64,000 nucleotides of DNA from the IMG/VR virus record IMGVR_UViG_3300027963_000035, positions 62,001 through 126,000 of that record; one strand, written 5' to 3'. The position numbers and the translations under genes are program-made. The notes under the pieces are model-generated. The model saw nothing but the letters and a program-made list of their open reading frames with translations. It had not been told where the DNA came from and did not search any database. This document shows positions 1,928 to 57,096 of this stretch, piece after piece; within the stretch, counting starts at the first letter, position 1, and the number at the start of each line of letters is the position of its first letter.

Positions 1928-2662
1928 TTAGAAATCAAAATCAAAATCTGGGTTTTCTGATTTTAATTTATCTATTGCTTTTTTAACTGCCTCGGGAGAG
2001 TCAACTTTTTCTTCTGTGGTCGAGTCCTCAGTGTCTGCTTTTTCTTTTACCTTAGACTTTTTTGCTCTTGGTTTTCTTTGCTTTTTCTCCTTGGTCGCAA
2101 CTTCAGCCGCCGATGTTGCCTTTTCTTTTTCTTTTGGATCCGATGGGCCCACGGTAGGCTCAGATTTTCTAACACCTTCTCCCTCAACTGGAGCTACCGG
2201 AGTCGACTCAGCAGAATAAACCAAATCTAATATTACTTGTTTAAATTTCTTTCCCCAATCATCTATTATTCTGAATAATCTTAGATTCTTGAGATTTTCC
2301 GACTCTTCCTCATTTAGACTATCTTGATTTTTTTCTATAATTGTCTCTAAGATATCACAACTATCTTTAATAGCTCTATATTCTTGAAAAGAAAATTGAT
2401 AACACTCTGATTTTGGCTCATCCGCAGCCTTTGCTGTGTCTTTTTTTGCCTCTGGGTCCTGTTCAACCTGGGCTAGGTTGCCAAATTTACCATATCTAAA
2501 TTTATTCCACCAATTCTTAACGTGGTCCCATACACCCATCTTTCCATCGGGACCTGATGCTACAGGCGATGCCGATGTCAAGAATTTATTTTTGAGTTCT
2601 TTTATTAGTTCATCTATTTTAAGGGATAATTCTAATTTTTTCTTTTCAATATCAGTTATCAT
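1928..2662 (-). CDS. Hypothetical protein, charged low-complexity C-terminus
   Basis: 244-aa ORF, TATATA element 8 nt upstream, abuts the convergent gene with zero gap. Confidence 0.6.
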   Translation of the reverse strand: MITDIEKKKLELSLKIDELIKELKNKFLTSASPVASGPDGKMGVWDHVKNWWNKFRYGKFGNLAQVEQDPEAKKDTAKAADEPKSECYQFSFQEYRAIKDSCDILETIIEKNQDSLNEEESENLKNLRLFRIIDDWGKKFKQVILDLVYSAESTPVAPVEGEGVRKSEPTVGPSDPKEKEKATSAAEVATKEKKQRKPRAKKSKVKEKADTEDSTTEEKVDSPEAVKKAIDKLKSENPDFDFDF

Positions 2663-2675
2663 AATAACTTATATA

Positions 2676-3125
2676 TTAATTAGACTCGGAAATATATTCC
2701 CCGATTTTCTTTAAAGACATGAGGCAACTATCAAATCGGTGGAAATCGCTAGAAAGATACTCTAGGGCCAAACCTTGAAATTTACTATTGACTTCTTCAT
2801 TTTCTACTTCAAAGTATATTGATTTTCCACGTTTTCCAAGAACTTTATACTTGTGCATTAGAATATAAGCAGCAACACCCAGATCTGTTGCAAATCTGGT
2901 ATTTCTAGAATCAAAATTATATTCTTTTATCTTTTTGAGCGACATTATGCAGCTATCAAATCTATGGAATTCGCTAGAAAGATAATCCAAACAAAGCTCG
3001 TCGAATTTCTCTTCATTCTCTACTTCGAAGATTATTTCTTTGCCTTTGCGGCCAACAACACGATAGTTGTGCATTAATATATAGGCTGCTGAGCCTAGGT
3101 CGCTAACACTTTTATTTTTTTCCAT
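2676..3125 (-). CDS. Small protein made of two tandem copies of a DUF5659-like domain
   Basis: SDLGSAAYILMHNYRVVG...LDYLSSEFHRFDSCIMSLKKI is repeated as TDLGVAAYILMHKYKVLG...LEYLSSDFHRFDSCLMSLKKI. The family name is from recall only. Confidence 0.6.
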   Translation of the reverse strand: MEKNKSVSDLGSAAYILMHNYRVVGRKGKEIIFEVENEEKFDELCLDYLSSEFHRFDSCIMSLKKIKEYNFDSRNTRFATDLGVAAYILMHKYKVLGKRGKSIYFEVENEEVNSKFQGLALEYLSSDFHRFDSCLMSLKKIGEYISESN

Positions 3126-3181: not shown

Positions 3182-3203
3182 TCATCGCCCTTGCGGACGA
3201 TGA
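3182..3203 (-). terminator. Probable intrinsic terminator downstream of the actin-like gene
   Basis: Minus-strand RNA UCAUCGUCC-GCAA-GGGCGAUGA: 9-bp stem (one U-G) with GNRA loop, followed by UUGCAUUUUU. Confidence 0.55.
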
Positions 3204-3232: not shown

Positions 3233-4237
3233 TCATTTTGCGTTTTCTGCCGCTAACAAGCAACCCTTCGCAACAGAGTATAAATTATCTTCTGGTTTAA
3301 TAATCTGCCCTATTTTAACTGGTATTTCTGTTTGCTTCAAGCACTCTCCAAGCATTTCTTTGAATCCGTTTGGACTTGCAGTTCCACCAGCAACGACAAA
3401 GTCTACTTCGTCTTCTGTTCTTACGTTTTTCTGAACATTAGCGAAACCTTTTTTGATCTCAGTTACAGTGTGTTCTATCATTAATCTGTACTGAGTCTGT
3501 ATAGCTCTTTCAACAAGAGTTGTCGCAGGTCTTGTTAGATCTATTTTTGTTTTTTCTTTATTGATAAAAGTTGGACTTTCCCCAACGGCTTTTCCGGCCA
3601 TTTTGTCAATCCAATCGCCACTATTCACTATCGAGAAGCTAAATATTGGATTGCCAAACATTGCATAACAAACATTTACCATACCACCGCCAAAAGATGC
3701 TGCTATCCCCGTATATGATTTATGAGCCAGTTCAGCATATATTATAGCCAATGCCTCATTAATGGGCCTAGGATCGACTGAGAAGCCCTTCTCTGATCTA
3801 TATGACTTGAATATGGCTTCTAAGATTTTGCCGTGATAATCGGCGTCAGTCTCTTCGTTTATGGCATTTGCCGGAACGCTATAGTAGAGAAGTTCTTTGT
3901 CTTTTGAAACTTCTCCTATAAGACTGTGGATCATGATGCTCATTATCTGAAACGCATCTTTTTCTTTTGGATTAACACACCCCGCCACCATCGGTCTTTT
4001 TAATTCGAGGCTATTCATGGTATATGCCATGTTGACCGCTGCCTCTCCAAGGGCATAAGCAACCTTATCTCTCTCTATCAAAGGCACTCCGGCTTGTTTC
4101 ATCATATTGAAAACAAATCTGTTCTCCAGCGGGAGCTCTATGAATGCATTCACTTCTTTTTTATAAGAAAAATTATCTGCATCATCTCTTTTGCAATTGA
4201 TTAAATTATAAGTTCCAACATCTGCGCCAATAGCCAT
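3233..4237 (-). CDS. Actin-fold ATPase (MreB/ParM/MamK/FtsA superfamily)
   Basis: Phosphate-1 GADVGTYNL, connect-1 INEALA, phosphate-2 SFGGGMVNV, adenosine VAGGTA, connect-2 SVAKG. Start moved from 4288 to 4237 because AAGGAGA (SD) lies 6 nt upstream. Confidence 0.82.
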   Translation of the reverse strand: MAIGADVGTYNLINCKRDDADNFSYKKEVNAFIELPLENRFVFNMMKQAGVPLIERDKVAYALGEAAVNMAYTMNSLELKRPMVAGCVNPKEKDAFQIMSIMIHSLIGEVSKDKELLYYSVPANAINEETDADYHGKILEAIFKSYRSEKGFSVDPRPINEALAIIYAELAHKSYTGIAASFGGGMVNVCYAMFGNPIFSFSIVNSGDWIDKMAGKAVGESPTFINKEKTKIDLTRPATTLVERAIQTQYRLMIEHTVTEIKKGFANVQKNVRTEDEVDFVVAGGTASPNGFKEMLGECLKQTEIPVKIGQIIKPEDNLYSVAKGCLLAAENAK

Positions 4238-4362
4238 TTTATTTCTCCTTTTTTCTTTTATGGTTCTCAGAAATTCTTCTTTTTCCATCAGTGTCGTAAA
4301 CTACAGGTACAACTGGACCACCGGTAACATTCTTTTTAATTCCATATATCCCAACCACTGAA

Positions 4363-4593
4363 TCAACCGCCCTTTCCAAAGTTAATTTTTTCTGTTGGTG
4401 CAAAATCCGGGATTGCCCACTGGACTTTGTCTTCTTCTTTTTTGTTTATTTTTTCTTCAATATTACTCTTTAATATTCCAGCCCCACTAGAGATTTCTCC
4501 CATATTTATATTCAAATCCAAAGAGATAGATATTTTAACCTCTCCATCCTTTGTTATTATTTTTACATCACCTGGTTTAATGAGTTGAGGCAT
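4363..4593 (-). CDS. Hypothetical protein
   Basis: 76-aa ORF co-oriented and tightly packed between neighbours. Confidence 0.5.
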   Translation of the reverse strand: MPQLIKPGDVKIITKDGEVKISISLDLNINMGEISSGAGILKSNIEEKINKKEEDKVQWAIPDFAPTEKINFGKGG

Positions 4594-4595
4594 TA

Positions 4596-5138
4596 TTAAC
4601 TCCCTGATACTACATTCACCGATGCTATTACTTGAACGGGGACTGTTTCTTGGTTATCGTTTGAAAATTCTATTTTTTGGATGTTTAGATCACCTGTATT
4701 GAAGACTTGTGTTTCACTTCCTAAAAGTCCAAAAACTGCATCATTCGATGAATTTATTCTAACGCTGACAGTATCTGACCCTCTGTTTGATATTTGTACG
4801 AACTCGGCAAATTCACTAACACCCAAGTCTACTACATTGTTTTCAAAATCTCCCTCTACTGATAATATGTAAACTCTGGGGGCGTTATTATTTGTTTTAT
4901 CAACATAAACAGACCCGTCATCCTCTAGCACCTCTATGAACGCATCTTCTAATTTGGCTTGTGGATAAGCATATCTTTTCCAGTAATTGGAATCTGTGAA
5001 TATTTGACCATCCTTTAATTCTCTGTGCTTTCCAAGAGGGCCTGTAACATAAATACTTCTTTGAATGCTTATGTCTTCGTTATATATATCTAGCAATCCT
5101 TGGACTGCGTTCTTTAGTTTTACCTTGAATTTACTCAT
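4596..5138 (-). CDS. Hypothetical protein, beta-rich C-terminus
   Basis: 180-aa ORF with TATATATA element just upstream. Confidence 0.6.
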   Translation of the reverse strand: MSKFKVKLKNAVQGLLDIYNEDISIQRSIYVTGPLGKHRELKDGQIFTDSNYWKRYAYPQAKLEDAFIEVLEDDGSVYVDKTNNNAPRVYILSVEGDFENNVVDLGVSEFAEFVQISNRGSDTVSVRINSSNDAVFGLLGSETQVFNTGDLNIQKIEFSNDNQETVPVQVIASVNVVSGS

Positions 5139-5547: not shown

Positions 5548-5819
5548 ACGTATTTTTTGTTTATGTAAAAAGTTCCTGCGTTAACCTCTAGTCTCAGGAG
5601 ATCTTCCTCACTACCTATGACTGTCCCGCCACTTCTTATGAAATCTTTTTTTATTTCTTTGTGATTTCCCTCGTCTATTGTTATTTTAGTGCCAAGATTT
5701 TTTGTATTTTTTGGATAGACTCTTTCTTGGAGCTTTGGCATAGAGGGAACTTTGTCCTGTTTTATCCACTTATTAAATTCATTCAAAAATGAAAAGTTGT
5801 CGTCAAATGGTGTTTTCAT
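5541..5819 (-). CDS. Hypothetical protein, last gene of the tail operon
   Basis: 92-aa ORF overlapping the upstream gene end. Confidence 0.5.
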   Translation of the reverse strand: MKTPFDDNFSFLNEFNKWIKQDKVPSMPKLQERVYPKNTKNLGTKITIDEGNHKEIKKDFIRSGGTVIGSEEDLLRLEVNAGTFYINKKYVY

Positions 5820-6645
5820 CAGTTATAAATTCTTTCACGTCACTAAGTTGTATGTATCCAGCATTATCTAATTTTTTAGAATGCCCATAATATTTTATAT
5901 CCATTTTACCCTTTAACCAGTGAAGACAGCAATCTATTATTTCTGATATTAAATTTTGTTGAGGATAAGAATATAGGCCGCTTTCTAATTTAACGCTACC
6001 CGGCTTATTTTCAATAAAGGAATCATCACAAGATAACAACAGTAATTTCTTGCACTGAAATCTATATGCAAGATTAATGGCAGCGCATATTACATTTCTA
6101 TAATCATCTATTTGATACATATTTTCTTTTGATCCACTATAGTTCACCCTCTCTTCATTTACTGCATAGTATTTATATTTTATTCCATTGTATCTTTCTA
6201 AAAAAGTATGATTAGTCTTGCTTGAAGCTATGCATCTGGGGAGAGTTCTATTTGTTCTTGGCAAATAATTTAAACATTCATCATATGGATTGTTAACAAC
6301 ATAATAATTTGGAGATTTATTGTTTTTCCATTTCTTTAGAGTTCCATTTACTGCAAGCACGCATACGTTTTGATCTTCTAAGACTTTATGAGAGTTTTCA
6401 AAATCATAACCGTCCGATACTATTGCTACTGTTGGGTGATAGATATTTTCTGAATCTATCCATGAATATCTGTTTTTATTATTGTAGAATTCGTTCTCAA
6501 GAAAAAGAAAGTATTCTTTTTCAGATGTCGTGGAATTTATATCAACGTAAGGACAAGAATAATTACAAAAGTTTCTAACCCAAAAGTTATAACTTGGAGT
6601 CTTTATAAACTCGTTGTTTTTTATTTTTTTAGTTCTAGTTTGCAT
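5803..6645 (-). CDS. Hypothetical protein with divergent similarity to DUF115/MptE-like/Maf-type Rossmann proteins
   Basis: VAIVSDGYDF...VLAVNG...PNYYVV...N..CAAINLAYRFQCKKLLLLSCD resembles the IIGxGPS / IavN / PDy / A..LA...G.k.I.L.G.D pattern but is degenerate. Confidence 0.4.
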   Translation of the reverse strand: MQTRTKKIKNNEFIKTPSYNFWVRNFCNYSCPYVDINSTTSEKEYFLFLENEFYNNKNRYSWIDSENIYHPTVAIVSDGYDFENSHKVLEDQNVCVLAVNGTLKKWKNNKSPNYYVVNNPYDECLNYLPRTNRTLPRCIASSKTNHTFLERYNGIKYKYYAVNEERVNYSGSKENMYQIDDYRNVICAAINLAYRFQCKKLLLLSCDDSFIENKPGSVKLESGLYSYPQQNLISEIIDCCLHWLKGKMDIKYYGHSKKLDNAGYIQLSDVKEFITDENTI

Positions 6646-26259: not shown

Positions 26260-29200
26260 TTAGCCTACTGTTCCTATGCTTGTTATTCCCTTAGATGCGC
26301 CTTGTCCGTGTTTACCTGTTTTCCATTTATAATATTTTGGAGGACTAGAGGAAACATAATTGGTCGCAGTGCTGGCTGCTGATTGCCCACCCTCTCCCGA
26401 TCCTTGTGATGGTTTCATGAATCCCACCATCTGCTGTAATAGAGTTATCATATTTTCTAATTTTTCAACTTGAGTCTGACCGGATTCTGCAATTGTGCTA
26501 AGTTCGGAAGTTTCCGCTGTTGCCGCTCCCGAAGTCACAGCGTCTCTTTGTAAAGACTCACCAATATCGGTAACCCGTGCGGTTGACGCCGGAACTGATC
26601 CGCTTGTAGTATTGTTTAATGGATATATCGGACTTGGCATACTCATCTTATTGGCCGTAGCAGCCCCTGTTTCTGCTGCTTTATTTGCACCTCCGAAGAA
26701 CCCGGCAATTTTCCCTCCTGCCCATCCGGCAGCAGATGCAAGTGTTCTGGCTGGTAGTGTTGCTGCATCCAGAGCAAACTTACCTACTGATAATGCGCCT
26801 TTGCCTATCATCTTCCAGCCATCAATATATTTTTGACCTAACCACATGGCGCCCTCACCAACAGTTTTTGCCCCATCCCACAGTTTAGACCCTAGATTTT
26901 TTGCACCTTCCCATAATGTTGATCCAAGATTTTTTGCACCTTCCCACGCACTGCTTGCTATTGACTTTGCACCTTCCCATGCACTACTCGCTAGTTTTCC
27001 TGCACCGCTTATTAATCCGTCCCCAAAGAAGTCGATACCTGCCGATAGAACTGGCCCTATAAAAGGAATCGCACCAGCTAGCCCACTTGCTAATTCTTTT
27101 ACCGCTCCTCCAACGTTTCCTTGAACCAATGCCGACAAAGCAAAACCAGCGCCGGCTAATGCGCCTATTCCCGGTAATTTTTTCAATAAACTTTTACCCA
27201 CTCCGCCCAATCCGGCTTTTGCTATAAAACCTCCGGCCTTGCCGAACATGCTTCCCATCAAACCGCCGCCCTTACTAAATAATGAACCTGCCTTGGCAGC
27301 AACTCCGCTTGCTTTGCCAAATAACCCACTCATTAAGCCTGTTCCTTTACTCAAAATTCCTCCGGCTTTGCTTGCTCCACCAGCTTTACCAAACATGCTT
27401 CCTACTATCCCTTTGCCAGACTTAATGCCTGAATCAACCTTGCTTTTTAATCCTCCTAAGAATCCTTTACTCGACTTGCCAGCTATTTTTTCAGCTGCAT
27501 TGCCTAAACTTTTTGTATTTTGATTCTTTAAATTTTTCATTCCTTTTAATAGAGGAATTTCAAGAGATTGTGCTGCCTCTGCACTGCAAGCACATGCATC
27601 ATCTCCTCCTCCATCTAATAGGGATCCAAACATAGATCCTACTCCACCAAGTAATTTGCCTGCTTTTCCTTTAATCCCACCAAGCAGATTACCGGCTGTT
27701 CCTAATGCTGCGTTCTTTCCTTTATTGGCGACTCCTAATACTCCTCTGCCAGCGGATGTTGATTTTACTTGACTTGTTAAACCCTTTCCAAGAGACGATA
27801 GTATTCCTCCTCCTTGTTCTCTTGACCTTGAGTACCCCTTAGCAAGAGGACTAAATGTTTCTTTTATTTTTGATCCTATTCCTTTAAAGAAATCTCCTAT
27901 CTTGGCGGCACCACCCGTCCCGGTCATACTTGAGAATCCTTTTGCAATTGATGAGAAAAATCCTTCTTGAGCTTGTCTGGCACCTGAGAATCCTTTTACA
28001 AAACCTGAAAATAAATTGGAGGTCAAGTTCATAGCCTGCCCAGCTACACTCTTTACTCCATTGAAAGAACTTGTTAATATTCCTGATAAACTCGACATTG
28101 CCTTCATAGCTAAACTTGGCAAACCAGTAACATAGCCTATAATTGTATAGGCCATCACAGAGAATATAGAAACCATCGCAGTTGCTAGATCAGGTATTAT
28201 CGAATGACCTACAAGCGTGTCATAGAGCCAAAAGAATGGAGCGAATATAGCCTTGACTAAATTAGAGGCCCAAGTTATTAATCCATTGAAAAAGTTTATT
28301 ATCATATACACAGGCGCTGTAAAGGCTTTCCAAATTCCTTTTGTTATTCTTGATAAATCAAAAGTTAATAAACCTTCAAAAAATTCAAGTACTCCAAATC
28401 CTATATCATAAATAAGTTCAAATACGGGACCAAATACATAGGAAATTAAACTAGCAATTGCTCCTATTATTCTTAAAGCATATGCAATAGGTTCCACGAT
28501 TACAGTCACTATTGCTCCTATTAACATTCCAACTGTCTTCAAAACAAATCTTAATATTTTGCCTATTGCCCCGAACATCTTGGAGAATATAGTAAACAGA
28601 CTACCAGTTTCTTCTAGTGTGGCATTGAAATCAAATATCGGATTAAGTATTGCGTATATTACATCGCCAATTGCGGTTAGTATTGATCCGAAGGGCGCCA
28701 ATGCGTAATATACAAGTTCTCCCACACCCATTAAGACATCACCAATAGTAGTGATTACACCCCAAATAGCTCCTGCTATTGCATCTATAATTCCCATTAC
28801 AACACTTAATATGGGTATCATTTTATTAAACTTTGCCAATGCTATAGTCAGCGTTCCTGTCGATCCTAACAGACTGTCAAAAATTCCAAAAGTTAAATAA
28901 TTTAATGCTCCTGTAACAGCGCCCGCACCCTTAGCAGCATAATATTCGGCAGTAGTTAATTTTTCTTGAGAGATTCCAAATATTTCAGCAGCTTGCTCCC
29001 CTGCTGCCATACTTCCCATTATAGCTCCTGCTATACCTACCAATATCGCCGCCCCTGCTGCTATCCCGGGCAGTGCTGCTACTATGGCACTCGCCGCCGT
29101 TCCACCTGCGCCGCCGGCGCTAGCTGTGCCATAGATTATTGCCTCTAATTTATTAATCTGATAATCTGTGGCTTTGCCCATTATGTCTGCTATGCCACCG

Positions 29201-31308
29201 GCAGCGCCAAAAACCCCTGTCAATGTCTTAGCCAAACCAGACTGATTTAATAGTCCGCCTATAACTCCGAGAGATGTTACTCTTAAGGTATCGTTCAATT
29301 CATTTAAAGATTGATTTACATCGGTCAACGCATCTACTTGACTCTTTTCTTTTACGCCAAGTTCTGCATTGGCATCACCCATTGTTTTAACTAGTTCTCT
29401 ATATGACTTGGGATCTTTTAAGGCGTTCTCTATTTGACTCGAAGTTATATTTAATTCTTTTTTCTTAGCCTTTTTTAAGCCTTCATTTATACCCTTTAAC
29501 GCAGTCTCTATAGATTGTTTCGCAACACCCTTAGAGTCAGTTGCAGTTATGCCAAGAGCTTTTAAGTCTTTGTCCATTCCTGGAAGTTTTGATCCAAATT
29601 TATCAAATGCTGCATCCATATTTCCAGCACTCTTAGCAACTTCGTCAAGTTGCGACATTATGTCTAAAGAACCTCCTGTGGTTAATGATCTTTGCTGATC
29701 CAGAAGGAGATTTTTTTCACCCAGAGTTAAGTTTTGTTTTTGCTTGGTTGTTATGTCACTTAATTTTTCGTCTAGTCCCTTTGAGGCTTCTCTTGTTGCT
29801 TCTATGCTCTTCTGGAATTCTCCCAATCCCATGCCATACCCAGATCTTAATTGTGCATCTAGTGTGGACTTCTGTTCATCGCTCATGTTGGCTATTTGAT
29901 CTAAGGAGGTTACTCCAAAGTTGCCAAGGATGCTTTCCATTCCTCCTGCTAGCTTTTTCATTCCTTCTTTAGTGCTCAATAGAGTGCCCGACATGAGTTC
30001 ACTTGTTGCTCCCATAGCGCCTGCAGCCTGATATAACAATGCCTTTTGTTGAGATGATGCTTCCATCAATCCACTCAATCCTTTGGTTGCAACACCTGCT
30101 ATTGAGCCCATCTGCTCGGATACTCCAAATTTTTCTGCGCTAGCCATCATTTCGACCATATTAGAAGCGGCAGACGTAGTTAATCTGGCTCCATTTCTTA
30201 GATTTTTTATAAATTGATCACTTTGTTTGACTGCGTTAGCAAGATTATCTCCTGTTACTCCTGTATTCCTTGCCGTTTCCTTTATGCTTCTTCCGAATTG
30301 TGCTAATTGATTTTCAGTCATACCTGTCGATAAAGCCATCCCGGAGAAAGTATCCCCTAACACTCCAGCTTCCACGCCTATCATCTTCTCTGTGTTTAAC
30401 TGGGTTTTAGATACATTTAAAGCTGCTTTTTGATCTTTGAATCCTTTCTTTAGATTAGAAATATAAGATGCTTGTGTCTTATCTCTTTCAAAACCTGTTA
30501 TTTTTGAAACCCTTCCTATATCTTCATAGGTTTTCTGCAAGCTTCTTGAATTTTTTGTGACGCCTTCTGTTTCATATGCAACCGCTCTGACACTCTGAGA
30601 GAATTCTCTTTCTTTCTTGACAATGCCATCTGTGACTTTGCTGAAAGCCGTATACCCAAGCATCGTTTCCTGAGACACTGCCAGGCTTCTGGATATATCT
30701 CCAATTGATTGCTTTTTTCTTCTGAGTGAGTTTAAGGCTGCGAGTTGATCTGGATCTTCTCTTCCGTAGCCTCCATATCCACCACCACCACCACCACCAC
30801 CACCACCTCCACCTCCACCACCTCCACCGGTTCCTCCACTACCTGTCCCACCTGTCATTGCACCAAAACCTTTTCTCAGGCTCTTTGCCAACGATTTCAT
30901 TATTTCCCCTAATTTGAAATCGTGTGTAAATATACTTCCCTTTTTTAGCCCGTGCTCAGCCAGTTTGGTCATCGAAGCTTCCATCTTCTTGTTTCCGGGA
31001 TTTTTTCTTCCCATGTCTCTAGGTAGCATAGGTCCGAATTTATTATTGCCGCCACTCGATGCTTTAGTGGATGATTTCAAAAAATCACCAACTGCAACCG
31101 CTAATTTTTTTGTTTCTTGTATCGATGACCGAAACTCTTTAGAAAGAGTTTCCATATCTTTTAGTAATTTAGTTGTGGGATCATTATCGTTTTTTTTGCC
31201 AAATGGCTTTGCTGGACCCGTGTCTTGTTTTGCTAATGATGAAATTAATCCACGGAGATCCTGCGCATTTAATCCCGAATCAATATTTCTCCCTAGATTG
31301 TCTATCAT
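26260..31308 (-). CDS. Tail tape measure protein
   Basis: 1682 aa, Ala/Gly-rich helical composition, central hydrophobic stretch, 11-residue Trp repeats (AWEGAKSIASS / AWEGAKNLGST / LWEGAKNLGSK / LWDGAKTVGEG); first gene of the baseplate operon. Confidence 0.85.
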   Translation of the reverse strand: MIDNLGRNIDSGLNAQDLRGLISSLAKQDTGPAKPFGKKNDNDPTTKLLKDMETLSKEFRSSIQETKKLAVAVGDFLKSSTKASSGGNNKFGPMLPRDMGRKNPGNKKMEASMTKLAEHGLKKGSIFTHDFKLGEIMKSLAKSLRKGFGAMTGGTGSGGTGGGGGGGGGGGGGGGGGYGGYGREDPDQLAALNSLRRKKQSIGDISRSLAVSQETMLGYTAFSKVTDGIVKKEREFSQSVRAVAYETEGVTKNSRSLQKTYEDIGRVSKITGFERDKTQASYISNLKKGFKDQKAALNVSKTQLNTEKMIGVEAGVLGDTFSGMALSTGMTENQLAQFGRSIKETARNTGVTGDNLANAVKQSDQFIKNLRNGARLTTSAASNMVEMMASAEKFGVSEQMGSIAGVATKGLSGLMEASSQQKALLYQAAGAMGATSELMSGTLLSTKEGMKKLAGGMESILGNFGVTSLDQIANMSDEQKSTLDAQLRSGYGMGLGEFQKSIEATREASKGLDEKLSDITTKQKQNLTLGEKNLLLDQQRSLTTGGSLDIMSQLDEVAKSAGNMDAAFDKFGSKLPGMDKDLKALGITATDSKGVAKQSIETALKGINEGLKKAKKKELNITSSQIENALKDPKSYRELVKTMGDANAELGVKEKSQVDALTDVNQSLNELNDTLRVTSLGVIGGLLNQSGLAKTLTGVFGAAGGIADIMGKATDYQINKLEAIIYGTASAGGAGGTAASAIVAALPGIAAGAAILVGIAGAIMGSMAAGEQAAEIFGISQEKLTTAEYYAAKGAGAVTGALNYLTFGIFDSLLGSTGTLTIALAKFNKMIPILSVVMGIIDAIAGAIWGVITTIGDVLMGVGELVYYALAPFGSILTAIGDVIYAILNPIFDFNATLEETGSLFTIFSKMFGAIGKILRFVLKTVGMLIGAIVTVIVEPIAYALRIIGAIASLISYVFGPVFELIYDIGFGVLEFFEGLLTFDLSRITKGIWKAFTAPVYMIINFFNGLITWASNLVKAIFAPFFWLYDTLVGHSIIPDLATAMVSIFSVMAYTIIGYVTGLPSLAMKAMSSLSGILTSSFNGVKSVAGQAMNLTSNLFSGFVKGFSGARQAQEGFFSSIAKGFSSMTGTGGAAKIGDFFKGIGSKIKETFSPLAKGYSRSREQGGGILSSLGKGLTSQVKSTSAGRGVLGVANKGKNAALGTAGNLLGGIKGKAGKLLGGVGSMFGSLLDGGGDDACACSAEAAQSLEIPLLKGMKNLKNQNTKSLGNAAEKIAGKSSKGFLGGLKSKVDSGIKSGKGIVGSMFGKAGGASKAGGILSKGTGLMSGLFGKASGVAAKAGSLFSKGGGLMGSMFGKAGGFIAKAGLGGVGKSLLKKLPGIGALAGAGFALSALVQGNVGGAVKELASGLAGAIPFIGPVLSAGIDFFGDGLISGAGKLASSAWEGAKSIASSAWEGAKNLGSTLWEGAKNLGSKLWDGAKTVGEGAMWLGQKYIDGWKMIGKGALSVGKFALDAATLPARTLASAAGWAGGKIAGFFGGANKAAETGAATANKMSMPSPIYPLNNTTSGSVPASTARVTDIGESLQRDAVTSGAATAETSELSTIAESGQTQVEKLENMITLLQQMVGFMKPSQGSGEGGQSAASTATNYVSSSPPKYYKWKTGKHGQGASKGITSIGTVG
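30778..30828. repeat. Trinucleotide microsatellite encoding a poly-Gly run in the tape measure gene
   Basis: Perfect (ACC)9 at 30781-30807 inside 17 consecutive ACC/TCC triplets (Gly codons on the minus strand). Confidence 0.85.
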
Positions 31309-54078: not shown

Positions 54079-54111
54079 TTTTATGTGCTTCACTTTGAGG
54101 TTAGAACTAAA

Positions 54112-57096
54112 ATGATAATTAATAAATTATATCAAATAATAAGTTCAAGAGAAAGTTATAATCTATCCGGTTTATCTCAAGTCGATATAGTATATGGAGA
54201 ATCCGCTAGTGGCAATAATCTTTTATCTTGGACCCCAACAGGACTTCCTGGATTTAGTACGTTGGGTCCTGAAAAATCATACATAATAAAAAATGCAAGT
54301 AATTTTTCTGATTATATTTTGAATATTAATTCAAATTCTCCTGATCAAAGTGGAGCTATAAATAAAAAATTTCAATTTATTACCTACAAAGCGGAATCTA
54401 ATTTTAATATTTCCAACCTTTCATCCGAAGTAAAGAATAGGATCACCGCAATTATTGCAGAATCCCCCAGTGGAAATAATTTGTTATCTTGGACGCCCAG
54501 TGGATTTCCTGGCTTTTCTCAGCTTGTTTGTGGAAAAACATACCTTGTAATAAGCAGGTCAAATAATTTTTCTCCTTATGATTTAGATTTGCCTCCCCCT
54601 CAAGTCTCATATCCAGTGTCCGCCTATTATGTTGGTGGATATTTTAGATTAAAAAATCCAAACACAAACAACTACACCTCTAATTTATCGTCTTCTTATT
54701 TTTATGAATCAGATATTGGTGACTATAATCTAATTGATAGAAAATTTTCCGGAACATCATTTGACTTTAATTATTCTAACTCAATCGATAAAGCAAAAGA
54801 AGACTTTCCCGAATTCACAGAAGTTGATTATGCATCATTTGAAGTTGTGTTAATTGACTCTTCTAGTAAAGTTGTCGGATGGGCCACCACTAGCACAGAT
54901 GCAGCAGAAGTTCCTACTCATGGAGCCGGGGGTTCTTATTTAAATATAAGATTATTTGATTTTCCAACAATATATGATGAAGAATCTTGGACATTGGGAT
55001 CCTTATCCAGCGGACCTTCTTCTATTGTTTTTAATAATATTAGTCCATATAAGATATTATCCCCCTCTGTTGTTTCCACCCCTACTCCCACGCTTACTCC
55101 CACGCTTACTCCCACATTAACCCTAACACCAACTCTCACAAGAACAAATACTAGAACCCCAACTGCAACACTTACAAGCACACCTACGCTAACAAGTACT
55201 CAGACGCTCACTTCAACTAATACTCAAACTCCAACTTTAACCTCAACCAACACTCAAGCATCTACTCCCACTTATACTCCTATTCCGACAAATACTCCAA
55301 CTTTAACAATAACCCCCACACTAACAGAGACTCCAACTTTAACAAGTACTCCCACACTAACAGAGACTCCAACTTTAACAAATACCCCCACATTAACAGA
55401 AACTTCTGCCCCAACGAATACTCCTACTCCTACGAATACTCCTACTCCTACGAATACTCCTACATTAACAAACACACAAACATCAACAAGTACTCCTACA
55501 CTAACTCCCACAATAAGTTTAACAAACACCAATACTCAAACACCAATTAAAACCAGTACTCCGACTTTAACAAATACTCCTACACTAACAGAAACTCCCA
55601 CTTTAACTAGTACTCCCACTTTAACAAATACTCCGACAATAACTGGCACTCAAACCCTGACCAGTACTCAAACATTAATTTTAACTCAGACGGCAACCTT
55701 AACAAGCACTCCAACACTCACTCCGACTTTAACTCCCACACTAACTAATACTCCTACTTTAACGGGAACTCCAACTTTAACTAGTTCTCAAACACCGACC
55801 AATACTAGCACTCCTACACAAACTAGTACCACAACATTAACTAACACTCCAACTTTAACATTAACTAGCACTCCAACTTTAACCAACACTAGAACATCAA
55901 CTAATACTCCAACATTAACTAACACCAAAACATTAACTAACACTCCAACATTAACTAGAACCAACACCAGAACTCCCACCAATACTCAAACTCCTACTTC
56001 AACTAAAACCCCAACATTAACCCAAACAGTAACAGGCACATATTTGTCTTCTGTTAATGGGTTAGTTCTACATCTAGATGCCGGGGATATATCGAGTTAC
56101 CCTGGCACTGGCTATGTGTGGAGAGATCTTAGCGGTCTTGGTAATCACGCAACACTCATAAGTCAGCCAATTTATAGTGCTAATCATGGTGGAATTTTGA
56201 TATTTAATTCCAATAGCACCACTCAATGGGCGGAGGTTACCAACAATGCTTCGATCAATAATTTGAGCGGTGACTTTGCTTATGAAATATGGGTTTATCC
56301 AAAGAATGGAGGTTTTACTTATGGTAAAATCTTTGGTAAAGGAAAATACTCGGCGGGGGCCGGATTCAATGGTGTTTTAAACAATATAAATAGTAATACC
56401 ACCGAGTGGCAATACCAAGATGCCGGCGGCAATCCGATTTCTCTCTTGACGGACAGTACTGATTTTAATACTTGGGTTCATCTCGTATACACCAGAACTA
56501 AGGGCGTGTTTAGATTATATAAAAATTCAGTAAAAATGTTTACCGATAATAGCCCGTTGATAAATAATTATGACTTTAGTAGCAATTATCCTCTTAGAAT
56601 TGCAGCCAACAGCCAACCAGTTCCAGATTGGTCACAACAAAGAGTAGGGGTATTTAAACAATACAATAGGGGATTATCTGCAGTCGAGGTTCTTCAAAAT
56701 TTCGAGATGTTGCGAGGTCGTTATGATATACCCTTCCCGACACCAACTCCAACAAAAACTTTAACTCCTACACCTACAATCACATTGACGGCAACGCCCA
56801 CATATACGCCGAATGTTATTTTTACTGATCCTATTAATCTAAGATCAAGATATGGTGCACCAAGTACACTGGCGTGGGATCAGAGAAACCTAGACTATAT
56901 AGCCAGCATAGAATCACCTAGGAATTATAAAATATTATCCGTATCTCAAAAAGCACCCGGATCAGGAAATAAATCAAATTACACGAGTTGCGGAGACAAT
57001 AATCACTGTTATTGGAATGGAAGTGGCTGGACTTTGGTAGGTGCTTGCTCGTCCAACTGGATCGGCAGCATGACACTAACTAAGATTTGCTGTTAA
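54112..57096 (+). CDS. Mucin-like Thr/Pro repeat protein with LamG/concanavalin-like jelly-roll domain; putative fibre/adhesin
   Basis: Duplicated N-terminal module ([18 protein letters not shown] twice), about 320 aa of TPT/TLT repeats, [25 protein letters not shown] LamG signature; start moved to ATG 54112 (GAGG upstream). Confidence 0.75.
55075..56037 (+). repeat. Degenerate 6-residue (18-nt) T-P-T-L-T-x coding repeat array
   Basis: Recurrent actccaactttaacaaat-like units through the region. Confidence 0.82.

What the first reader, a model, noticed from the sequence alone, without database searches (positions are those of the whole stretch)
3233..4593. Phage-encoded actin-fold ATPase near replication genes
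All five actin-superfamily motifs are visible. Cytomotive filaments in large phages are mostly known as tubulin-type PhuZ, with few actin-type examples (e.g. AlpC of corynephage CGP3). This protein could position replicating phage DNA or assembly sites; small co-oriented neighbours are candidate adaptors. No centromere-like repeat array was seen nearby.
Basis: partly seen in the sequence, partly recalled or inferred. Interest (0 to 1): 0.6.

Follow-up and report, generated by a model that had tools for sequence, protein, structure and literature searches.

The report
Volactin-type actin gene in huge phage
A huge freshwater bacteriophage carries a highly conserved gene for a filament-type actin of the 'volactin' family, always next to the same small phage-only partner genes, which suggests these tubulin-less giant phages build their own actin cytoskeleton inside the host.

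Summary
The actin-fold protein is real, but the coordinates merge two genes. The actin gene is 3233-4237 (-), 334 aa. 4363-4593 (-) is a separate 76-aa gene in another frame. The ~125 nt between them is debris of a GIY-YIG homing endonuclease.

The window lies in a 251-kb fragment (about 50% complete) of a freshwater huge phage. Relatives reach 527-595 kb, each with one copy and no tubulin. The gene is 65-98% identical across 154 viral contigs. It always sits in a phage-specific cassette: s76, actin, a tandem DUF5659-like protein, and an acidic protein. No centromere-like repeats, integrase or ParA were found.

Most likely it forms an ATP-driven cytomotive filament used during lytic infection. 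What it moves is unknown. Predicted actin-s76 binding got only weak support (0.40 against 0.00 for controls). I found no published report of it.

The parts
3233..4237 (-). Phage volactin-family actin gene (334 aa, 36.9 kDa; stop codon 3233-3235). Motifs: phosphate-1 4211-4228, connect-1 3731-3760, phosphate-2 3674-3697, GDWID 3605-3619, adenosine 3362-3388, connect-2 3263-3274.
4238..4362 (-). Intergenic remnant of a GIY-YIG homing-endonuclease gene. It includes the spurious 17-codon N-terminal extension of the longest ORF (4238-4288) and the AAGGAG ribosome-binding site of the actin gene.
   Evidence: Alignment with L002 and L009, which keep about 500-560 more bases here. Intact GIY-YIG/NUMOD3 genes lie at the same place in L024 and L026.
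4363..4593 (-). s76: conserved 76-aa protein with a beta-rich N-terminus (4501-4593), a variable low-complexity linker and a conserved C-terminal peptide W-x-IPDF-x4-K-I-x-FGK (4366-4419). Candidate filament adaptor or regulator.
   Evidence: Immediately upstream of the actin gene on the same strand in 80 of 84 loci; all four exceptions are three loci with too little upstream flank and the second-clade locus L083. Alignment A3. Complex prediction with actin: weak support, 0.40 against 0.00 for controls.
3182..3203 (-). Terminator-like hairpin (9-bp stem, 5 G-C pairs, followed by a T-tract) between the actin stop codon and the d149 start.
   Evidence: Consensus scan; sequence read. Function is inferred only.
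2676..3125 (-). d149: tandem duplication of a ~72-aa DUF5659-like alpha+beta domain. As conserved as the actin (median 72% identity).
1928..2662 (-). Acidic, charge-rich protein (244 aa here, up to 737 aa in relatives) with a conserved N-terminal region and a variable, low-complexity C-terminal part.
   Evidence: Cluster 7 has members in 73 of the loci, on the actin strand downstream of d149 in every case where its position was measured. Composition. No Pfam or PHROG family.
4596..5138 (-). g180: conserved 180-aa acidic protein whose stop codon lies 2 nt before the s76 start, so it is probably co-transcribed. It may belong to the upstream structural module rather than to the actin system.
   Evidence: Upstream on the same strand in 77 loci. 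Junction read. No family hit.

Best explanation
The gene at 3233-4237 encodes a phage version of volactin, a prokaryotic actin. Most likely it binds ATP and polymerises into dynamic filaments inside the infected bacterium. It probably works with phage-specific partners encoded around it: s76, whose conserved C-terminal peptide on a flexible linker would dock on the actin; a tandem DUF5659-like protein; and an acidic, partly disordered protein. Together they would organise some step of the lytic cycle of a ~0.5-Mb phage, such as placing the replication or assembly site or moving large cargo, the job that PhuZ tubulin does in other jumbo phages.

Shown: family membership, the fold, intact nucleotide-binding motifs, strong conservation, single copy, the conserved cassette, and the absence of tubulin.

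Inferred: polymerisation, the partner contacts, and the cellular role.
For: - Family: full-length PF25216 match, 213.9 bits against a cut-off of 35. The volactin-specific phosphate-2 motif is shared with Haloferax. The family is monophyletic against MreB, support 100*.
- Filaments in the family: Haloferax volactin forms dynamic filaments in vivo (PMC10869688).
- Motifs: nucleotide-binding and connect motifs are invariant in 21 sequences from two phage clades.
- Conservation: median 70% identity for the actin and 72% for d149, against 26-50% for the other neighbours, including the primase.
- Copy number: one copy in 5 of 5 large genomes, two of them CheckV-complete.
- Selfish elements: an intein sits exactly in the phosphate-2 motif in one relative, and homing endonucleases flank the gene. 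Both are typical of indispensable conserved genes.
- Cassette: s76, actin and d149 are co-oriented and adjacent in almost every locus with enough flank, usually followed by the acidic protein, and are absent from cellular volactin loci.
- No tubulin in this record or in four large relatives.
- Actin-s76 prediction: 0.40 against 0.00 for the best control (weak support).
- Strong AAGGAG ahead of the gene, where only 15 of 55 genes have any SD core.
Against: - No experiment shows polymerisation, ATPase activity or expression. No RNA run holds the sequence.
- Phosphate-2 lacks the usual Asp and Thr (S-F-G-G-G-M-V-N against MreB D-I-G-G-G-T-T-E). The consequence for hydrolysis is unknown, although this holds for the whole volactin family.
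- The complex test gave only weak support: runs of 0.54, 0.18 and 0.40, with partner pLDDT about 42. By the tool's own calibration such a pass is more often wrong than right unless the guess was likely beforehand.
- The partners have no recognisable function or DNA-binding features, so the cargo is unknown.
- The second phage clade has the actin in a different gene context, so a single shared role is not assured.
- The host is unknown.
Confidence: 0.6

Rival explanations
1. ParM/AlpC-like DNA segregation. The filament pushes or positions copies of the phage genome (or an extrachromosomal prophage) through a DNA-binding adaptor bound to a centromere-like site.
For: The gene order, a small adaptor-like gene directly upstream of the actin gene, resembles alpA-alpC of prophage CGP3, where AlpA links phage DNA to AlpC filaments (PMC4446434). 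Volactin dynamics were described as ParM-like. A Toprim primase lies about 1.7 kb away.
Against: No direct-repeat array lies near the cassette, and there is no intergenic tandem array anywhere in the window. All cassette proteins are acidic to neutral, pI 4.5-6.1. d149 has no known DNA-binding fold and s76 has no family match. There is no ParM/StbA Pfam match. No tyrosine integrase and no ParA occur in this record or in two complete relatives. The cassette continues the tail-gene strand rather than forming a separate early operon.
Confidence: 0.12
2. Manipulation of host cell shape or envelope. The phage actin interferes with or replaces the host's morphogenetic cytoskeleton, for example to enlarge the cell or block division for a very large virion burst.
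For: The only studied family member, Haloferax volactin, acts in cell-shape transitions. Structurally it is also close to MreB. In most relatives, glycosyltransferase-like genes (GT9, MptE/Maf-like) lie in the same gene block.
Against: The protein starts directly at the phosphate-1 motif, so it has no N-terminal extension that could form a membrane-binding helix as in many MreBs. No envelope-synthesis partner was found in the cassette. The partner genes are phage-specific and absent from cellular volactin loci. The glycosyltransferase genes are absent from this window's cassette and more plausibly serve virion glycosylation.
Confidence: 0.15
3. A non-cytoskeletal actin-fold ATPase (Hsp70-like chaperone, sugar kinase, EutJ/BadF-type activase) used for folding or metabolism.
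For: In the viral structure library the nearest named hits include viral Hsp70 homologs. There is a marginal BcrAD_BadFG hit at E 0.098. The phosphate-2 motif is atypical.
Against: The viral Hsp70 hits are weak (TM by target 0.26-0.42). The protein lacks a substrate-binding domain (334 aa). In the PDB the top 30 chains are filament actins and EutJ is at rank 33. The Pfam assignment to Volactin is about 180 bits above the cut-off.
Confidence: 0.05

Closest known systems
Volactin (VolA, HVO_2015) of Haloferax volcanii; Pfam PF25216
   Same: Same Pfam family over the full length. Same signature motifs, including the S-x-G-x-G-M-x-N phosphate-2. About 33-35% identity. One clade against MreB.
   Different: Encoded by a bacteriophage, not an archaeal chromosome. 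It forms a deep, separate branch with small clade-specific insertions. It is embedded in a phage-only partner cassette absent from cellular loci. The cell-shape role known for VolA is unlikely to transfer directly.
AlpC/AlpA of Corynebacterium prophage CGP3
   Same: A phage-encoded actin with a small co-transcribed partner gene directly upstream, and a proposed role in organising the phage's intracellular cycle (PMC4446434).
   Different: No alpS-like repeat array and no basic DNA-binding partner. Lytic-type huge phage without an integrase. A different actin family; sequence relatedness to AlpC was not tested because no AlpC sequence was available from a tool.
PhuZ tubulin spindle of nucleus-forming jumbo phages (Chimalliviridae)
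   Same: A phage-encoded cytoskeletal polymer in a very large phage, conserved across a lineage. This is the functional analogy proposed here.
   Different: Actin fold, not tubulin fold. No tubulin gene in this record or in four large relatives. Whether a phage nucleus exists here was not tested.
MamK (magnetosome actin) and MreB
   Different: Only 15-19% identity. No significant Pfam MreB_Mbl match for this protein. It separates from MreB by a long branch. There is no magnetosome or elongasome context.
ParM/ParR/parC type II plasmid partition
   Same: An actin-like ATPase with small neighbouring genes. ParR binds ParM through a C-terminal peptide (my own knowledge), which is the model for the proposed s76 peptide.
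   Different: No StbA/ParM family match, weaker structural similarity (TM 0.53), no parC-like repeats, and no recognisable ParR-like DNA-binding adaptor.

Membership tests
Volactin family (Pfam PF25216) | Full-length match to the family HMM above the curated cut-off | tested here: met
   213.9 bits against a cut-off of 35; residues 1-330 on profile 1-321 of 321. 213.4 bits in the genome search.
Volactin family (Pfam PF25216) | Groups with Haloferax volactin to the exclusion of MreB | tested here: met
   Quick IQ-TREE of 115 rows with 5 MreB as outgroup: volactin clade 100*, window clade 96* inside it. The root lies on a long branch, so the branching order within the family is uncertain.
Volactin family (Pfam PF25216) | Family-specific phosphate-2 motif S-x-G-x-G-M/L-x-N, plus G-G-D-W-I-D | tested here: met
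   SFGGGMVN and GDWID in the window; GVSFGAGMTN and GGDWID in Haloferax; DIGGGTTE in MreB.
Volactin family (Pfam PF25216) | Forms dynamic filaments in vivo | not testable with these tools
   Known only for H. volcanii VolA (PMC10869688). No volactin structure has been solved.
ParMRC type II partition system | ParM/StbA-type actin sequence | tested here: not met
   No PF06406 or other ParM-type hit at E <= 0.1. ParM TM is only 0.53-0.55.
ParMRC type II partition system | Centromere (parC-like) repeat array next to the operon | tested here: not met
   Only the internal coding duplication of d149 was found. No intergenic arrays.
ParMRC type II partition system | Small DNA-binding adaptor (ParR-like) | tested here: inconclusive
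   s76 and d149 are small conserved neighbours, but they are not basic (pI 5.4 and 6.1) and d149 has no known DNA-binding fold. DNA binding was not measured.
MreB | Match to PF06723 MreB_Mbl and placement within MreB | tested here: not met
   No PF06723 hit for this protein at E <= 0.1. Some homologs carry weak precomputed hits. MreB is separated by a long branch. A PDB profile search reaches MreB only at E 0.03.
AlpC/AlpA phage actin system | Small co-transcribed adaptor that binds the actin | tested here: inconclusive
   s76 is adjacent upstream in 80 of 84 loci. The complex prediction gave weak support: 0.40, best control 0.00.
AlpC/AlpA phage actin system | Adaptor-binding repeats (alpS) upstream of the operon | tested here: not met
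   No repeat array.
PhuZ/TubZ phage tubulins | Tubulin/FtsZ fold GTPase | tested here: not met
   The protein has an actin fold. No PF00091 match in this record or in four large relatives.

The most novel reading that the evidence does not exclude
A lineage of globally distributed freshwater huge phages (about 0.5 Mb, no tubulin) runs its own actin cytoskeleton as a core module. The module would be a volactin-type polymer with three phage-only partners: a tethered-peptide adaptor, a tandem DUF5659 protein and an acidic disordered protein. It would be an actin-based counterpart of the PhuZ system. The phage clade is a deep sister branch to all cellular volactins sampled, so viruses may have been an old reservoir or vehicle of this actin family between archaea and bacteria.
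Probability: 0.3. Interest if true: 0.8.

Novelty: new variant of a known kind. Interest (0 to 1): 0.66.

Why it matters
Phage-built cytoskeletons are known almost only from PhuZ tubulin in nucleus-forming jumbo phages, and from a single actin example in a cryptic prophage (AlpC).

Here an actin of the recently named volactin family turns out to be one of the most conserved genes of a very widespread huge-phage lineage. There are thousands of database proteins and genomes up to about 0.6 Mb. The gene is single-copy, has a fixed set of unknown partner genes, and comes with no tubulin.

That makes a concrete question testable: how do the largest phages outside Chimalliviridae organise replication and assembly in the cell?

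It also extends the volactin family from haloarchaea to bacteria (Planctomycetota, Omnitrophota, Patescibacteria) and to viruses. And it offers a soluble, non-halophilic family member for the first structure and biochemistry of a volactin filament.

Tried and rejected
- One long ORF over 3233-4593: rejected, stops and a frame change.
- The ORF start at 4288: rejected in favour of 4237 (endonuclease debris, SD site, homolog N-termini).
- PHROGs: no family for the actin or its partners, except a weak hit for d149.
- PDB sequence searches: nothing real with the single sequence (potassium-channel noise). The profile reaches MreB only at E 0.03.
- Megablast of 20 kb against GenBank phages: no match.
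- Rfam on the window and on the L002 insert: nothing. No tRNAs.
- Sigma-70-like promoter scan: count not above shuffles (19 against 19.9), so the promoter-like site at 5195-5168 is not evidence.
- Expression: no RNA run holds the sequence.
- Complex prediction for actin + s76: weak support only (0.40, best control 0.00, 58 of 80 solved complexes and 2 of 110 mismatched pairs reach the mark; at or below 0.60 such passes are more often wrong than right). It is not used as proof.
- The search for homologous proteins only sees proteins of 0.55-1.75 times the query length, so intein-bearing or fused copies are not counted.
- Literature: no mention of actin homologs in the huge-phage papers checked.
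- One malformed paper query returned an error.

Full report
**What is at the coordinates**

The reported span 3233-4593 does not hold one gene. Translated in one frame on the minus strand it is broken by many stops. ORF listing gives two minus-strand ORFs in different frames: 3233-4288 (351 aa) and 4363-4593 (76 aa).

Inside the first ORF, an ATG at 4237 is preceded by AAGGAG and opens with M-A-I-G-A-D-V-G-T, the phosphate-1 motif. Every homolog starts at this point.

The ~125 nt between the two genes aligns to the two ends of a longer insert present in the 98%-identical relative L002 and in L009. In L024 and L026 the same position holds an intact GIY-YIG/NUMOD3 homing endonuclease. So 4238-4362, including the 17-codon 'extension' of the longest ORF, is endonuclease debris. 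The actin gene is 3233-4237 (334 aa, 36.9 kDa, pI 5.6).

**Identity of the protein**

Pfam places it full-length in PF25216 Volactin: 213.9 bits against a cut-off of 35, residues 1-330 on profile positions 1-321 of 321. The only other hit is marginal (BcrAD_BadFG, E 0.098). There is no match to the ParM/StbA, MreB_Mbl, FtsA, Hsp70 or actin families. PHROGs has no family for it.

Volactin (HVO_2015) is the actin homolog of Haloferax volcanii. It forms long filaments that grow and depolymerise rapidly, spans the cytoplasm with its tips at the membrane, was compared by its authors to ParM dynamics, and is needed for the timely rod-to-disk transition (PMC10869688).

All five actin-superfamily motifs are present and invariant across 21 sequences from two phage clades.

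Phosphate-2 reads S-F-G-G-G-M-V-N rather than the usual D-x-G-G-G-T-x-D/E. That looked like a defect at first. An alignment with Haloferax, Natronomonas, Thermoplasmatota, Archaeoglobaceae, Planctomycetota, Omnitrophota and MreB sequences shows it is a signature of the whole volactin family: Haloferax has GVSFGAGMTN and MreB has DIGGGTTE.

**Fold**

An AlphaFold2 model built on the alignment is confident (mean pLDDT 90.7, pTM 0.88).

Foldseek against the PDB ranks the MamK filament first (TM 0.72/0.74), then MreB (0.63-0.73) and BeeR (0.73), with ParM and eukaryotic actin lower. The non-filament EutJ appears only at rank 33.

- BeeR: 28.1
- MreB: about 26
- F-actin and crenactin: about 25

No volactin-family structure has been solved. 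A family profile reaches MreB only at E 0.03. Viral proteins with predicted structures are more distant: TM at most 0.66, among them viral Hsp70 homologs and Bacillus phage G gp506.

**The genome**

The window is bases 62001-126000 of a 251,265-bp IMG/VR virus record that CheckV rates about 50% complete. It encodes baseplate and tail proteins (Phage_base_V, Tail_P2_I), several PKD-domain proteins, a YHYH protein, a Toprim primase, an SNF2 helicase and a PolyA_pol-family nucleotidyltransferase.

The DNA occurs in freshwater and lake metagenomes from 12 studies. All are DNA runs and none is RNA, so expression could not be examined.

Only 15 of 55 genes have any Shine-Dalgarno core. The actin gene is one of 8 with a strong one.

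**Distribution**

- The word-based protein search found 1,819 relatives. The best 120 are 69-94% identical, all PF25216, on contigs up to 673 kb.
- IMG/VR holds 154 loci at 65-98% identity, on contigs up to 533 kb.
- GenBank phages hold only two homologs, both in uncultured huge phages: LR756511 (595 kb, 59.6% identity) and LR745208 (485 kb, 32.6%).
- The latter represents a second large phage clade: 1,191 relatives on contigs up to 473 kb.
- The gene is single-copy in all five large genomes examined, two of them CheckV-complete at 533 and 527 kb. None of these, nor the window's record, has a tubulin gene.

In cellular genomes, 431 relatives were confirmed. At 33-38% identity they are Halobacteria (including Haloferax), Thermoplasmatota and Archaeoglobaceae, but also Planctomycetota, Omnitrophota and Patescibacteria.

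The few hits above 55% identity lie in MAGs of unrelated phyla (Chloracidobacterium, Acidimicrobiaceae, Nitrosotalea, Neisseriaceae). They carry phage cassette genes (all of them d149, three of them most of the cassette), so they are mis-binned phage contigs.

**Phylogeny**

The tree is a quick IQ-TREE of 115 rows (LG+C20+F+G4, SH-aLRT support), rooted on five MreB sequences fetched from genomes that also hold volactin homologs.

- The volactin family is one clade (100*).
- The window's phage clade (96*) is sister to all other members.
- The second phage clade groups with the Planctomycetota/Omnitrophota proteins (97*).
- The archaeal proteins form their own clade (95*).

The outgroup branch is long, so the order of these deep branches is not secure. 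What is safe to say is that the window's clade is not nested within any sampled cellular group, so it is not a recent host acquisition.

**The cassette**

I called ORFs in 84 loci, clustered them and measured their positions relative to the actin gene.

- s76 lies directly upstream on the same strand in 80 loci.
- d149 lies directly downstream on the same strand in 81 loci.
- The exceptions are loci with too little flank, plus the second-clade locus L083.
- The acidic protein follows d149.
- A 180-aa acidic protein precedes s76, and its stop codon is 2 nt from the s76 start.

Median identity to the window's proteins is 70% for the actin and 72% for d149. It is 48% for s76 and g180, about 50% for the primase and PKD proteins, and 27% for the acidic protein.

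HMMs of the four partners find nothing in the archaeal, planctomycete or other cellular volactin loci. The second phage clade has other neighbours: a VWA protein, a 207-241-aa protein overlapping the actin start, and a 372-aa protein plus a Zn-ribbon protein downstream.

**The partners**

s76 has three parts:
- a conserved beta-rich N-terminus, M-x-Q-L-I-K-P-x-x-V-K-V-x-T-K-D-G-E...L-D-L-N-I-N;
- a linker that varies in length and sequence;
- a conserved C-terminal peptide, W-x-I-P-D-F-x4-K-I-x-F-G-K.

This is the layout of a tethered short-peptide ligand.

A two-chain complex prediction of actin plus s76 reached a median score of 0.40 (runs 0.54, 0.18, 0.40), with all three controls at 0.00. 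Partner pLDDT was about 42, and the runs agreed in at least 69% of contacts. The tool calls this weak support. The mark was reached by 58 of 80 solved complexes and 2 of 110 mismatched pairs, but passes at or below 0.60 are more often wrong than right unless the guess was likely beforehand. My own alignments were used, so those counts hold only roughly. I treat it as a lead.

None of the cassette proteins is basic: pI 4.5-6.1.

**Signals and selfish elements**

A terminator-like hairpin (9-bp stem plus T-tract) lies at 3203-3182, between the actin stop and d149. It could set a higher level of actin than of the downstream partners, but this is inference. Promoter-like matches are no more frequent than in shuffled sequence.

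There is no repeat array near the cassette and no intergenic tandem array in the window.

The gene attracts selfish elements:
- GIY-YIG endonucleases between s76 and actin, intact, decayed or (here) almost deleted;
- another GIY-YIG near the actin gene of the second clade;
- in L087, a ~372-aa Hint/LAGLIDADG intein inserted exactly within the phosphate-2 motif...G-I-S | intein | C-G-A-G-M-V-N.

Such elements usually home into conserved sites of genes that the phage cannot lose.

**Mechanism**

The best-supported reading is a phage-encoded cytomotive actin filament. It rests on family membership, with a member shown to polymerise in vivo, on structural proximity to filament formers only, on intact nucleotide-binding motifs, and on very strong purifying selection.

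It would be used in lytic infection. No integrase or ParA was found, and the only ParB_N-domain proteins lie far from the locus in the complete relatives. The cassette continues the strand of the tail-gene block.

What the filament moves or positions is not known. I consider a role in organising replication or assembly sites, or in transporting large cargo in a cell filled by a ~0.5-Mb phage, to be the most likely. The reasons are the analogy with PhuZ and AlpC and the absence of tubulin.

The rivals:
- ParM/AlpC-like DNA segregation is disfavoured by the lack of repeats and of basic or recognisable DNA-binding partners.
- Host-shape manipulation remains possible, since volactin's only known role is morphogenetic.
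- A non-filament enzyme or chaperone is unlikely.

**Novelty**

Volactin is a known family and phage-encoded actins are known (AlpC). But the literature I could search does not report actin homologs in huge phages. That includes the original huge-phage paper, which mentions only PhuZ tubulin. Some JGI records carry the automatic label 'actin-like ATPase involved in cell morphogenesis'.

The phage-specific partner cassette, the scale of the distribution, and the presence of the family in bacteria and viruses appear undescribed. I rate it a new variant of a known kind.

**Limits**

- No biochemical, structural or expression evidence.
- Host unknown.
- The tree was a quick search with a long outgroup branch.
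- Only one protein pair could be tested in silico.
- The word-based search is blind to much longer or shorter relatives.
- The exhaustive representative search was deliberately not run.

Noticed in passing
window 4238-4362 (compare L002:5309-5928, L009, L024:5254-5970, L026:2966-3595): The s76-actin intergenic region is the deletion scar of a GIY-YIG/NUMOD3 homing-endonuclease gene. Relatives show it intact, decayed or absent, a snapshot of the gain and loss cycle of a homing endonuclease next to a conserved gene.
   Followed up: yes
L087:4001-6136 (contig RXKI01000042.1, binned as Neisseriaceae): The phage volactin gene carries a ~372-aa intein (Hint plus LAGLIDADG endonuclease) inserted exactly inside the phosphate-2 nucleotide-binding motif (S | intein | CGAGM). 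Such long copies are invisible to the length-limited homolog search.
   Followed up: yes
L084, L085, L086, L087 (MAGs labelled Chloracidobacterium, Acidimicrobiaceae, Nitrosotalea, Neisseriaceae): These 'genome' contigs carry the huge-phage cassette genes (g180, GT9, s76, actin, d149, acidic protein; L086 only actin and d149) at 55-71% actin identity. They are most likely phage contigs mis-binned into MAGs of four unrelated phyla.
   Followed up: partly
L088-L163 (for example L089, L098, L106, L157): Volactin-family genes occur not only in Halobacteria but also in Thermoplasmatota and Archaeoglobaceae, and in bacteria (Planctomycetota, Omnitrophota, Patescibacteria). At least an Omnitrophota and a Phycisphaeraceae genome have both MreB and a volactin homolog.
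   Followed up: partly
L015, L016, L019, L022, L026, L029-L031, L035, L037, L040, L042, L080, L081 (between actin and d149): About 14 relatives (cluster 30) have an extra co-oriented gene of 200-350 aa, with no Pfam family, inserted between the actin gene and d149. L082 has an unrelated insert at the same place. It could be a further partner or another mobile gene.
   Followed up: partly
L083, L172, L173, L174: A second huge-phage clade from groundwater and soil (high G+C, about 33% identity to the window's actin) has its volactin gene in a different conserved context: a VWA protein upstream, a 207-241-aa protein overlapping the actin start, and a 372-aa protein plus a Zn_ribbon_8 protein downstream. 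It again has a GIY-YIG endonuclease nearby.
   Followed up: partly
window 5803-6645; L020:4732-5676 and equivalents: An MptE-like (PF01973) protein lies next to the PKD-domain tail proteins. In most relatives, but not in this window, a GT9 heptosyltransferase-like gene and another conserved gene sit between g180 and s76. This may reflect virion protein glycosylation.
   Followed up: no
window 54085-57096: A 1003-aa ORF holds a long block of imperfect 18/36/72-nt repeats (about 55083-56033) that encode Thr/Pro/Asn-rich units, like a mucin-type linker. The strong negative GC skew at 54-56 kb coincides with it.
   Followed up: no
window 26260-31308: A 1682-aa ORF in the tail/baseplate block has no Pfam match and holds a (CCA)n run of about 17 copies at 30779-30828. 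It may be a tape-measure or giant structural protein.
   Followed up: no
whole window: Only 15 of 55 genes have a Shine-Dalgarno core upstream (background 11%), and most starts sit in A/T-rich leaders. This fits a host with weak SD usage, but the host was not determined. No tRNA genes or Rfam families were found in the window.
   Followed up: partly
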